The translations under genes were made by a program, and so were the position numbers. A DNA stretch of 64,000 bases, taken from Vicugna vicugna. Its lineage: Eukaryota. Shown piece by piece: positions 54,496 through 57,601 of this stretch; within the stretch, counting starts at the first letter, position 1, and every line of letters begins with the position of its first letter. Where the stretch lies: positions 3,485,365-3,549,364 of the forward strand of contig MU063898.1 in assembly GCA_013265495.1 (NCBI GenBank). Direction: 5' to 3'. The notes beneath the pieces were generated by a model. It saw nothing but the letters and a program-made list of their open reading frames with translations. It did no database searches and was not told the DNA's origin.

Positions 54496-56301
54496 AAGCC
54501 AAGTAGTTCCCCTGGCCTTTATATTGCTTAATCTTTGATAATTTCTCATTCCCATGCTGTCAGTCAATACATACCCAGAAGCCCTGTTCATTGAGACTCT
54601 GAAGTAGATTCTAACCCACTGAAACTACTTTTAATTGAATTTCCCCACTTCTTCTGTGTCATCTTAAAAAGTCCTTTCTCTGTGTTTTACTGTTTAGTGA
54701 AAGAGATGCCATAATCATAAAGACTGTTAGAGTAGCCTTATGACCTTTACTGTAACATCAGGTCCTAATAGTAAAGTCTTTCAATATTGCCAATATTTTT
54801 CAACATGGCCTTCCAACAGCTCTAAGACTAGGTCTTTCAATTCTTCAGTGTCACTAGCATCAGGTCTTCTGGGATCCATAGCTTCTAACATCTCCAATTG
54901 CCAGATCTTCTAAATTTTGCAATATCTGTGTCTTCTACTCTCTGGCCTGCAGCATCTCCAAGGCCAGTGTTTTCTAATCTCCTCACTATTGGGGACATTA
55001 AAAGTCTAGGTCTGCTAATATCTCCAAAAATCAGTCTTCAAGTTCCAGGTCTTGTCTTTCAGAGTCTAGAGTTCTAACTTCCAGTGTTTCTATGTTCCCA
55101 ATCCTCCAATGTGTCCTAGATACAGGTCTTCTAGAGTCCACGTATTTTATTGTGTCCAAGTCTAGCTCTTCCCATGTCTTCCAGCACATAGATCATTCAG
55201 TTCCTATAACTTTTAGTGTCTCCTGGAGCCTGATTTTATAATGTCTTGTCATCACAAGTTCCTCCAATGTCCAAGTCTTTCAATATCTCTAAGGACCTGA
55301 TCTTCTAACATTCAGATATTTCAACAACCCCAATGTCTGAATGGGTGGGTCTCTTTATGTCCTTATCTCTTCGGATGTCCTAAGGTTCAGGGCTGCCAAC
55401 ATTCTTGACTTCCAGCATCATGAAAATTATATCTTCCAAATTCTATGTCTTTTAGCATGAATGTATCAATATACAGGTTTTCCAGTGTCTCCCAATATCC
55501 AAGGCTTATGATTTTGAAATTTCTAAATGTCTAGATCTTCTATTGTTCATATCTTCCAATGTTTAGGGCTTTCAAGGTACAGGATTTGCAATGTCTCTAG
55601 TGTTTCGGGCTTCTAGTATTCGCGGCTTCCAATATCCACTAATTCCAACACTCAGGGTCTCCAAAGTCTCCAATGTTCAGAATAACGAATGTCCTCAAAA
55701 TCTAAGGCTTCCAATGTCTCCAACATCCTGTGCAATGTCTCCAATGTCCAGGGTTTCCAATGGCGCCAATGTCTTCCAACGACTCCAGGTCTTCCAGCAA
55801 CTCCAAGTCTTCCAACTAATTCCAAGTCTTCCAACAACATCAAGGTCTTCCAGAAAATCCACGTCTTCCAGACAATCCATGTCTTCCAGCAATTATAAGT
55901 CTTCCACAAAATCCATATCTTCCAGGAAAATCCATGTCTTCCAACAATTTCAAGATCTTCCAGCCAATCCACGTCTTCCAGAAAAATCTATGTCTTCCAC
56001 CAATTTAAGTCTTCCAGCTAATTTACGTCTTCCAGAAAAAATCCAGGTCTTCCAGTCAATCTGTGTCTTCCGGAAAGAAATCCAAGTCTTCCACCCAGTT
56101 CACGTCTTCCAGAAAAATCTACGTCTTCCATCAAATACAGATCTTCCAGAAAAATCCAATTCTTCCAACTAGTCCATGTCTTCCACCAAATCCAGTCTTC
56201 CGGTCAACCCATGTCTTCCAGACAAAAATCTATGTCTTCCACTAAATCCAGGTCTTCCAATAAAGTGACATCTTCCACTAAAGTCAAGTCTTCCAGCAAA
56301 T

Positions 56302-56865
56302 TTATGTCTTCCTAGAGATTAATGTCTTCCAGAAAATTTGTGTCTTCCAGTAACCTCCTGGTCTTCCAGCAAATTTATGTCTTCCAAATAATCCAGGTCT
56401 TCCGGACAATTCGGGTCTTCCTGAAAATCCATGTCTTCCAGGAAATCCATGTCTTCCAATGACCTCCAGGTCTTCCAGCCTATCCAAGTCTTCCAGAAAA
56501 TCCATGTCTTCCATCAAATCCATGGCTTCCAGAAAATCCATGTCTTCCAGCAAATCCTTGTCTTCCAGCAAAGTTGTGTCTTCCATCAAATTCATGTCTT
56601 CCAGAAAATCCACGTCTTCCACCAAAGCTGTGTCTTCCAGAAAATCCATGCCTTCCACCAAAGCTGCATCTTCCAGAAAATCCACGTCTTCCACCAAAGC
56701 TGCATCTTCCAGAAAGTCCACGTCTTCCAACATAGCCATGTCTTCCAGAAAATCCACGTCTTCCACCATAGCTGCATCTTCCAGAAAATCCACGTCTTCC
56801 ACCATAGCTGCATCTTCCAGAAAATCTACGTCTTCCAACAAAGCCACGTCTTCCAGAAAATCCAT
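56302..56865 (-). CDS. CDR1: CDR1 (cerebellar degeneration-related protein 1)-like ORF, 187 aa, antisense to CDR1as; coding status doubtful
   Basis: The translation has the CDR1 hexapeptide repeats ([12 protein letters not shown]) followed by IGRHGFSGR and GGYWKT segments, as in human CDR1. The codon equivalent to the human start (MAMLEDVDF versus MAWLEDVDF) is at 56739. A TAA at 56302-56304 truncates the WKTWIF tail. Confidence 0.55.
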
Positions 56866-56886
56866 GTCTTCCTACACCTCCAAGTC

Positions 56887-56909
56887 TTCCAGCATCTCCA
56901 GGGCTTCCA
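56887..56909 (+). promoter_or_regulatory. miR-671-5p near-perfect (AGO2 slicing-type) target site
   Basis: TTCCAGCATCTCCAGGGCTTCCA versus the reverse complement of miR-671-5p, CTCCAGCCCCTCCAGGGCTTCCT. There are 13 contiguous matches through the seed and centre plus 3' pairing, at the same relative position as in human CDR1as. Confidence 0.9.
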
Positions 56910-57601
56910 GCGTCTTCTTGTCTTCCAGCATTTCCATGTCTTCCAGCATCTCCACGTCTTCCAGCACCTCCATGTCTTCCGACAAATACTCAGTCTTCCA
57001 ACAGCAGGCTCAATATCCACGTCTTCCAACGTCTCCAGTGTACCGGCCTTCTAACATTCAGGTCTTCCAGTGTCTACGATATCCAGGTATTTTTAACATG
57101 TTCCATAGTCCAGGTCTTCTGCCCTTTCCCCAGGTCCAGACTTTTTCAAGATTAGTCTTCCCAAGTCTGAGCATTTCCATGTTCAGATTTCTCCACAGAC
57201 AAGTCTTCCAACTCAAAAATTCCTGCTTCTGGTAGAATTAGCTTCAAAAAATTGAATAGGGCATTCCTTCTTATAGACTAGATCTTATGGATCAACTGTA
57301 CTGCAGCTTAATAGTGTTTTTTTGCTACTAGGAAATGTATATTTATTCTTTACAACTTTTAAAGATAGTGTTCATAAAACAGCTTCTATAAACACACAGA
57401 TGGGATTGCTGTGATAAATTTTGCTAATTTGCTAATGCTTATATTTTTTATACAGTCAACTCTGTTTAGTTACAAGTGAAATTCTTATTTTAATGAGAAA
57501 AATATTTGTTTAGAGACTGTATTATTTTAGATAAAATTAACATACAGTGTATTTATTTTTTGTAACATCAATTTTTGTTGTTTGGTCTTATGTGACGTAA
57601 G

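What the first reader, a model, noticed from the sequence alone, without database searches (positions are those of the whole stretch)
55752..57086. Complete camelid CDR1as/ciRS-7 circRNA exon with about 67 miR-7 sites
A single 1,335-nt exon holds about 58 GTCTTCC (7mer-m8/8mer) and about 9 extra TCTTCCA (7mer-A1) matches to miR-7-5p (manual count). The seed heptamer is held constant while the spacers drift, so no site has extended 3' pairing (AGO loading without slicing). The predicted back-splice junction is ...ATATCCAG|GGTTTCCA. This is the known brain circRNA of the Cyrano/miR-7/miR-671/Cdr1as network. The system itself is not new, but its camelid sequence, length and site count can be read directly here.
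Basis: partly seen in the sequence, partly recalled or inferred. Interest (0 to 1): 0.85.

Follow-up and report, generated by a model that had tools for sequence, protein, structure and literature searches.

The report
Camelid copy of CDR1as miR-7 sponge

Summary
Window 55752-57086 (+) is 1,335 nt. It holds 58 GTCTTCC (51 as 8mer GTCTTCCA) and 9 further TCTTCCA-only matches, 67 miR-7 sites in an 18/36-nt tandem array, against about 7 GTCTTCC expected in the whole window.

The CDR1as/ciRS-7 reading passes every sequence-level test I could run:
- The opposite strand matches the CDR1 "LED repeat" (Pfam E 1e-53).
- Both exon ends match the published human back-splice junction and carry AG|...|GT.
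- One near-perfect miR-671 site sits at 56887-56909.
- An inverted MIR pair lies 3,048 nt upstream and 555 nt downstream, as in human (about 3.0 and 0.6 kb).
- Seven RNA data sets of a close relative hold the exon's words but almost none of the flanks'.

Circularity itself was not shown.

Two corrections apply. The spacers are not free-drifting, because an AAATCCA block is about 75% conserved. And 28 of 67 sites can add 5-6 pairs to miR-7 nt 13-18, although none is sliceable.

"Camelid" cannot be tested from this window. This is a known system, so interest is low. Other first-stage notes of this scan cover the same stretch.

The parts
55752..57086 (+). CDR1as/ciRS-7 exon, 1,335 nt, with 67 miR-7 seed matches (51 8mer, 7 7mer-m8, 9 7mer-A1)
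   Evidence: the ends match the published human back-splice junction
55750..55751 (+). AG of the 3' splice site used as the back-splice acceptor (inferred)
   Evidence: position fixed by homology with the first bases of human ciRS-7
57087..57088 (+). GT of the 5' splice site used as the back-splice donor (inferred); context CAG|GTATTT
   Evidence: position fixed by homology with the last 40 nt of human ciRS-7, 36 of 40 identical
55766..57003 (+). Tandem array with periods of 18 and 36 nt (about 68 units of 18 nt; two alternating unit types)
   Evidence: positional conservation
56887..56909 (+). miR-671-5p site: Watson-Crick pairs to nt 2-14, G:U at 15, mismatch at 16, pairs at 17-22, G:U at 23; slicing-competent centre
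   Evidence: duplex -42.2 kcal/mol against -53.5 for a perfect site; miRNA sequence checked
56524..56530 (+). Second GGCTTCC (miR-671 7mer-m8 seed) in a unit that has lost its miR-7 seed; no extended pairing seen
56302..56865 (-). Antisense 187-aa ORF, remnant of the CDR1 hexapeptide (LED) repeat; open only across the longest run of 26 same-frame seeds
   Evidence: Pfam LED_rpt PF20854 E 1.2e-53; 47% identity to a Dipodomys 'cerebellar degeneration-related antigen 1-like' protein; frame bookkeeping
52577..52704 (-). Upstream MIR element, inverted relative to the downstream one; its end lies 3,048 nt before the exon
   Evidence: distance matches the human figure of about 3.0 kb
57641..57888 (+). 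Downstream MIR element, starting 555 nt after the exon
   Evidence: distance matches the human figure of about 0.6 kb; arm-arm duplex -115.9 kcal/mol against -45.0 +/- 5.3 for shuffles
54752..55751 (+). Decayed continuation of the repeat in the upstream intron: 1 perfect GTCTTCC against 17 one-mismatch variants

Best explanation
This is the orthologue of the mammalian CDR1as/ciRS-7 locus. A long non-coding precursor is transcribed on the + strand. Pairing of the inverted MIR elements at 52577-52704 and 57641-57888 brings the donor at 57086|57087 next to the acceptor at 55751|55752. Back-splicing then releases a 1,335-nt single-exon circle. The circle presents 67 seed-type sites for miR-7. These bind AGO-miR-7 without being cut, because central pairing is absent. 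The circle therefore stores or buffers miR-7. One nearly fully paired miR-671 site (56887-56909) allows AGO2 slicing and turnover of the circle. Shown here: the site array, the splice-site dinucleotides, homology of both exon ends to the human junction, the miR-671 site, the MIR pair and its spacing, the antisense CDR1 repeat, and accumulation of an exon-only RNA in a close relative. Inferred from the family and not shown here: circularity, brain expression, miR-7 binding and miR-671 slicing in this species.
For: Counts and chance. Array. Antisense CDR1 LED repeat: Pfam E 1.2e-53 and a named CDR1-like hit. The published human junction probe (PMC10122638; PMC10705315) aligns 36 of 40 at the exon's 3' end and 12 of the first 13 nt at its 5' end. 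miR-671 site: 19 of 23 identical to a perfect target and best in the window, duplex -42.2 kcal/mol, miRNA sequences verified. Inverted MIRs sit 3,048 and 555 nt from the splice sites, against about 3.0 and 0.6 kb in human, where deleting either one abolishes ciRS-7 (PMC7371899). RNA: ten RNA runs from five studies hold the same 0.54 of the exon's sampled words. Seven of them (X6, X7, X9-X13) hold about 0-1 of the 73 flank words, while run X1 of the same organism holds 0.37 of those words. Constraint sits on the RNA and not on the protein. The six bases TCTTCC are kept in 67 of about 71 units. They fall in all three antisense frames with 15 frame switches, and every frame contains stops. The seeds decay at the exon border: 58 perfect against 13 one-mismatch inside, 1 against 17 in the 1 kb upstream.
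Against: There is no read-level evidence for the back-splice junction. Two exact junction scans of metagenome contigs found nothing, which carries little weight. Contig word shares cannot tell the strand, so the RNA seen could in principle be antisense CDR1 mRNA. They also cannot tell a circle from a linear exon. The tissues of the holding runs are unknown or non-brain ('reproductive system'). Both splice sites are weak by consensus, with a poor polypyrimidine tract and GTATTT. The X-linked location and the LINC00632-type host transcript could not be checked.
Confidence: 0.88

Rival explanations
1. The array is primarily the coding repeat of the CDR1 protein gene on the minus strand (hexapeptide xLEDxx). 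On this reading the miR-7 seed matches on the + strand are a by-product of the codons for Leu-Glu-Asp.
For: A 187-aa minus-strand ORF (56302-56865) matches Pfam LED_rpt at E 1.2e-53. An annotated rodent CDR1-like protein is a hit.
Against: Only 34 of 67 seeds lie in the LED frame. The frame switches 15 times along the array, and all three minus frames have 8-15 stops per exon length. The bases that would be synonymous third positions of xTG-GAA-GAC are invariant or nearly so, which is not what protein-level selection leaves. The review PMC13125240 reports no detectable CDR1 sense transcript in human or mouse brain.
Confidence: 0.03
2. The exon is expressed in this species only as an ordinary linear exon of a spliced lncRNA, or as a retained fragment, and not as a circle.
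For: Circularity was not tested. The word-share data show only that exon sequence accumulates without its flanks.
Against: All known determinants of back-splicing are kept. These are AG and GT at the positions homologous to the human junction and the inverted MIR pair at human-like distances with strong predicted pairing. In human and mouse the RNA is detected only in circular form (PMC13125240).
Confidence: 0.07
3. A young, neutrally evolving minisatellite whose uniform heptamer reflects recent expansion or gene conversion and not selection for miR-7 binding.
For: It is a tandem array with an alternating 36-nt super-unit. Near-identical 72-nt blocks occur around 56650-56830, so some recent duplication is evident.
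Against: Within the same units, three positions are almost random (information 0.1-0.45 bits) while the six seed bases are kept in 67 of about 71 units. The repeat continues into the upstream intron, but there the seeds are mutated at scattered positions. Both exon ends are conserved with human, so the structure predates the split of the two lineages.
Confidence: 0.02

Closest known systems
Human CDR1as/ciRS-7 (hsa_circ_0001946; 1,485 nt, more than 70 miR-7 sites, one miR-671 site; host LINC00632, Xq27.1)
   Same: Single exon antisense to CDR1, with an 18-nt periodic miR-7 seed array. The exon ends match the published junction (36 of 40 and 12 of 13 nt). There is one near-perfect miR-671 site near the 3' end. 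Inverted MIRs lie about 3.0 kb upstream and about 0.6 kb downstream.
   Different: It is about 150 nt shorter (1,335 against 1,485 nt) and has 67 sites against 'over 70'. It lacks several nt just after the junction relative to human. The antisense ORF is open for only 187 aa here. Circularity, expression and chromosome were not tested.
Mouse Cdr1as (2,975 nt, about 130 miR-7 sites; host Cdr1os)
   Same: Same architecture and the same miR-7/miR-671/Cyrano network, according to PMC13125240.
   Different: The mouse circle is more than twice as long with about twice the sites. The present exon is of the human-sized type. No mouse sequence was compared here.
Cyrano (OIP5-AS1) miR-7 site
   Same: Also binds miR-7.
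   Different: Cyrano has one extensively paired site that triggers miR-7 degradation. Here all 67 sites have only 6-8 contiguous seed pairs, with at most 5-8 further pairs in the 3' half, and none is contiguous through the centre.

Membership tests
CDR1as/ciRS-7 | Dozens of miR-7 seed matches on one strand of a single exon | tested here: met
   67 sites in 1,335 nt, all on the + strand; about 7 GTCTTCC expected per 64 kb
CDR1as/ciRS-7 | Lies antisense to the CDR1 hexapeptide-repeat ORF | tested here: met
   Minus-strand ORF 56302-56865 matches Pfam LED_rpt at E 1.2e-53; CDR1-like hit
CDR1as/ciRS-7 | Exon ends orthologous to the known back-splice junction, with AG/GT splice sites | tested here: met
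   Published human junction probe aligns 36 of 40 and 12 of 13 nt at the two ends; AG at 55750-55751 and GT at 57087-57088
CDR1as/ciRS-7 | One near-perfectly complementary, slicing-competent miR-671 site | tested here: met
   56887-56909: nt 2-14 and 17-22 Watson-Crick paired, -42.2 kcal/mol; miR-671-5p sequence confirmed
CDR1as/ciRS-7 | miR-7 sites lack central pairing and so are not sliced | tested here: met
   Contiguous pairing from nt 2 is 6-8 nt at every site. Only 3 of 67 pair at both nt 10 and 11 in the ungapped register, and never contiguously
CDR1as/ciRS-7 | Flanking inverted MIR elements that drive back-splicing | tested here: met
   52577-52704 (-) and 57641-57888 (+), 67% identical over 145 nt, E 1e-7. 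Distances of 3,048 and 555 nt against about 3.0 and 0.6 kb in human. Duplex z of about -13 against shuffles
CDR1as/ciRS-7 | Accumulates as a processed RNA containing the exon but not its introns | tested here: met
   Seven RNA runs hold 0.52-0.54 of exon words and about 0-1 of 73 flank words; flank words are detectable in the same organism (X1, 0.37). Coarse test: no strand and no base-level boundaries
CDR1as/ciRS-7 | Covalently closed circle (back-splice junction reads, RNase R resistance) | not testable with these tools
CDR1as/ciRS-7 | X-linked, inside the LINC00632/Cdr1os transcription unit; brain-enriched | not testable with these tools
   No mammalian genome alignment or tissue labels were available. 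A CpG island at 40501-41500 is only a candidate promoter

The most novel reading that the evidence does not exclude
The array may not be a uniform set of seed-only sites. It alternates between two unit types. In one type (28 of 67 sites) a conserved AAAATC/AAATC block can add 5-6 pairs to miR-7 nt 13-18 across a loop that is 1 nt shorter on the target side. This could form a deliberately mixed-affinity sponge that sets how long miR-7 dwells on the circle, or shields its 3' end. A second miR-671 seed at 56524 might cooperate in turnover.
Probability: 0.15. Interest if true: 0.35.

Novelty: already known. Interest (0 to 1): 0.15.

Why it matters
CDR1as is the best understood circular RNA and is reported as conserved across placental mammals, Laurasiatheria included. 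Finding it in one more species is therefore expected. The value here is descriptive:
- exact coordinates, length (1,335 nt) and site inventory for this genome;
- evidence that the MIR pair keeps its human spacing;
- a clean within-locus illustration that selection acts on the RNA seed and not on the antisense CDR1 frame.

No paper in the searched library describes the camelid copy. That makes it a gap in annotation and not a discovery.

Tried and rejected
No junction or depth data were obtained.
2. Exact scans of JGI metagenome contigs for the predicted junction (33-mer and 21-mer) gave no hits, which is uninformative.
3. An exact look-up of ten ORFs of the region in the protein collection, meant to reach transcript contigs, found none on record.
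4. The search for homologous proteins with the antisense ORF gave a single hit, Dipodomys CDR1-like. It was no help with the species.
5. The repeat finder for inverted repeats (seed 11, at least 40 nt) found nothing. The MIR pair appeared only with sensitive blastn.
6. Rfam found no family for the exon, only a tRNA-like hit at 59933-60005.
7. Pfam scans of eight large ORFs elsewhere in the window, meant to find a transposon protein that would name the species, found nothing.
8. A rolling-circle ORF was considered because 1,335 = 3 x 445. It was rejected because all six frames carry stops.

Full report
**Observation**

The stretch 55752-57086 on the + strand is 1,335 nt.
- It contains 58 GTCTTCC. 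Of these, 51 carry the following A (8mer GTCTTCCA) and 7 do not.
- Nine further TCTTCCA are not preceded by G.
- That gives 67 miR-7 seed matches, with no additional 6mer-only site.

Dinucleotide-preserving shuffles of the whole 64-kb window give 6.7 +/- 2.9 GTCTTCC on both strands together (largest 16). The window has 67, of which 58 lie in this exon and all on the + strand. Successive sites are 18 nt apart 46 times and 19 nt apart 10 times. Tandem Repeats Finder reports periods of 18 and 36 nt over 55766-57003. The borders read ...TGTCCAG|GGTTTCCA at the left and ...ATATCCAG|GTATTT at the right.

**Identity of the locus**

- **Antisense CDR1 repeat.** The minus strand carries a 187-aa ORF (56302-56865). 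It matches the Pfam LED repeat PF20854 at E 1.2e-53, and its tail matches the WKTW repeat family weakly, below the curated cut-off. Both repeat types read as different frames of this same array. The only database relative found is a rodent protein named "cerebellar degeneration-related antigen 1-like".
- **Match to the human junction.** The 15-mer across the predicted junction occurs in six papers as probe sequence. I read two of them, and both use it against the human CDR1as back-splice junction. The 80-nt BaseScope target printed in PMC10122638 aligns 36 of 40 with the last 40 nt of the exon. It aligns 12 of 13 with the first 13 nt, after which the human sequence has several extra bases. Both splice sites are therefore at positions homologous to the human ones.
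- **miR-671 site.** The best match in the whole window to a perfect miR-671-5p target is 56887-56909, with 19 of 23 identical. It forms Watson-Crick pairs to miRNA nt 2-14, G:U at 15, a mismatch at 16, pairs at 17-22 and G:U at 23. The duplex energy is -42.2 kcal/mol, against -53.5 for a perfect site. Pairing through nt 10-11 is what AGO2 slicing needs (established knowledge).

**Biogenesis signals**

Sensitive blastn shows that the MIR element at 57641-57888 (+) has an inverted copy at 52577-52704, with 67% identity over 145 nt and E 1e-7. Reading both confirms the same MIR body in opposite orientation.
- The arms lie 3,048 nt before the acceptor and 555 nt after the donor.
- Yoshimoto et al. 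[quoted passage not shown]
- The same paper reports that deleting or reversing either one impairs ciRS-7, and that these MIRs are conserved in Laurasiatheria.
- The predicted arm-arm duplex is -115.9 kcal/mol, against -45.0 +/- 5.3 for shuffles. A short (TAA)n/(TTA)n stretch next to both arms contributes to that figure.

**RNA evidence**

Junction reads could not be examined.

An indirect test was possible with the two run searches.
- For 55400-57400 (213 sampled words), RNA runs of "organism A" hold 0.34-0.47 of the words.
- For the exon alone (140 words), ten runs from five studies hold the same 0.54.
- By arithmetic, X6, X7 and X9-X13 hold about 73-76 exon words and about 0-1 of the 73 flank words.
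- X1 holds about 27 flank words (0.37) and X2-X4 hold 12-16. The flank words therefore exist in that organism and are absent from the other runs.
- Probable DNA runs of "organism B" hold 0.96 of the flank words.
- The common ceiling of 0.54 corresponds to about 98% per-base identity. This fits a full-length exon in a close relative of the window's species.

So a processed RNA that contains the exon without its immediate introns accumulates in several independent data sets, four of them explicitly labelled RNA-Seq. This does not show strand, exact borders or circularity.

**What is under constraint**

- **Units that kept the seed.** Of about 71 repeat units, 67 keep TCTTCC. The four that lost it read GGCTTCC twice (one of them the miR-671 site), GCCTTCC and GTCTTCT.
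- **Spacer conservation.** Anchored on the seed, the flanking G (t8) is 87% conserved and the A (t1) 90%. Three spacer positions are nearly random (0.1-0.45 bits). A block AAATCCA at -9 to -3 is 66-79% conserved. "Spacers drift" is therefore only partly right.
- **Antisense frames.** The seeds fall in all three antisense frames (34, 18 and 15) with 15 frame switches. Every frame on both strands has stops. The CDR1 reading frame is thus not maintained along the array, while the seed is. The bases that would be synonymous third positions in xTG-GAA-GAC do not vary.
- **Decay outside the exon.** The repeat continues upstream of the exon, but there the heptamer has decayed. The 1 kb before the acceptor has 1 perfect against 17 one-mismatch copies, with the changes scattered over the heptamer. 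Inside the exon there are 58 perfect against 13, and 9 of those 13 differ only at the first base and keep TCTTCCA. The change in preservation coincides with the exon border. This is what selection on the mature RNA predicts.

**Pairing beyond the seed**

At every site, contiguous Watson-Crick pairing from nt 2 stops after 6-8 pairs. Duplex energies average -17.0 kcal/mol (range -22.1 to -12.3), against -36.7 for a perfect target.

However, with the target loop 1 nt shorter than the miRNA's, the block AAAATC or AAATC pairs with miR-7 nt 13-18.
- 28 of 67 sites have a run of at least 5 such pairs, mostly 6 pairs ending at nt 18.
- Shuffling each spacer gives 9.3 +/- 2.5 such sites, with a maximum of 18.
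- The units share ancestry, so this excess is descriptive and is not evidence of selection.
- It does mean that "no 3' pairing" is too strong.

**Comparison and novelty**

The 2026 review PMC13125240 gives 1,485 nt and over 70 sites for human and 2,975 nt and about 130 sites for mouse. It describes one miR-671 site, MIR-dependent and near-complete circularisation, no detectable CDR1 sense transcript, and restriction to placental mammals. The present exon is a human-sized version with 67 sites. No paper in the library describes the camelid copy.

The camelid origin cannot be tested from this window, because the run organisms are coded. Other agents' notes on the same genome call it alpaca- or llama-like. 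I treat that as a lead only.

**Verdict**

Circularity rests on homology plus indirect RNA evidence. The system is already known.

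Noticed in passing
window 55743-55751 versus 57078-57086: The last bases of the upstream intron (...AATGTCCAG) resemble the last bases of the exon (...GATATCCAG). The back-splice junction therefore differs from the colinear genomic sequence only from the fourth base upstream of the join. Junction callers with short anchors would confuse the two.
   Followed up: partly
window 40501-41500: CpG island (GC 0.55-0.63, CpG observed/expected 0.76-0.92) about 14 kb upstream of the exon. 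A second CpG-rich 500-nt bin lies at 12001-12500 (GC 0.64, observed/expected 0.80). Both are candidate promoters of the host lncRNA.
   Followed up: no
window 2000-12500: About 10 kb of GC-rich (0.51-0.55), strongly strand-skewed sequence (GC skew -0.19 to -0.38, AT skew up to +0.31). It contains three more MIR copies inverted relative to the downstream MIR, at 2861-2978, 5022-5230 and 6825-6981, which could compete for pairing. Other first-stage notes call this region a cryptic minisatellite.
   Followed up: no
window 59933-60005 (-): tRNA-like sequence, Rfam tRNA 34.1 bits (gathering score 29), about 2.8 kb downstream of the exon. It is probably a tRNA-derived SINE and not a gene.
   Followed up: no
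window 57602-57658 and 52690-52705: Trinucleotide microsatellites (ATG/ATA/TAA type) directly abut the head of both MIR arms. Being in inverted orientation, they extend the predicted arm-arm pairing with low-complexity A/T pairs.
   Followed up: partly
window 56650-56830: Near-identical 72-nt blocks (...CCACCAAAGCTGCATCTTCCAGAAAATCCACGTCTTCC...) recur four to five times. This shows recent local duplication inside the array, and it is where most of the ATCTTCCA (7mer-A1) sites sit.
   Followed up: no
window 16260-26207: Six runs of N (77-370 nt) in an AT-rich stretch.
   Followed up: no
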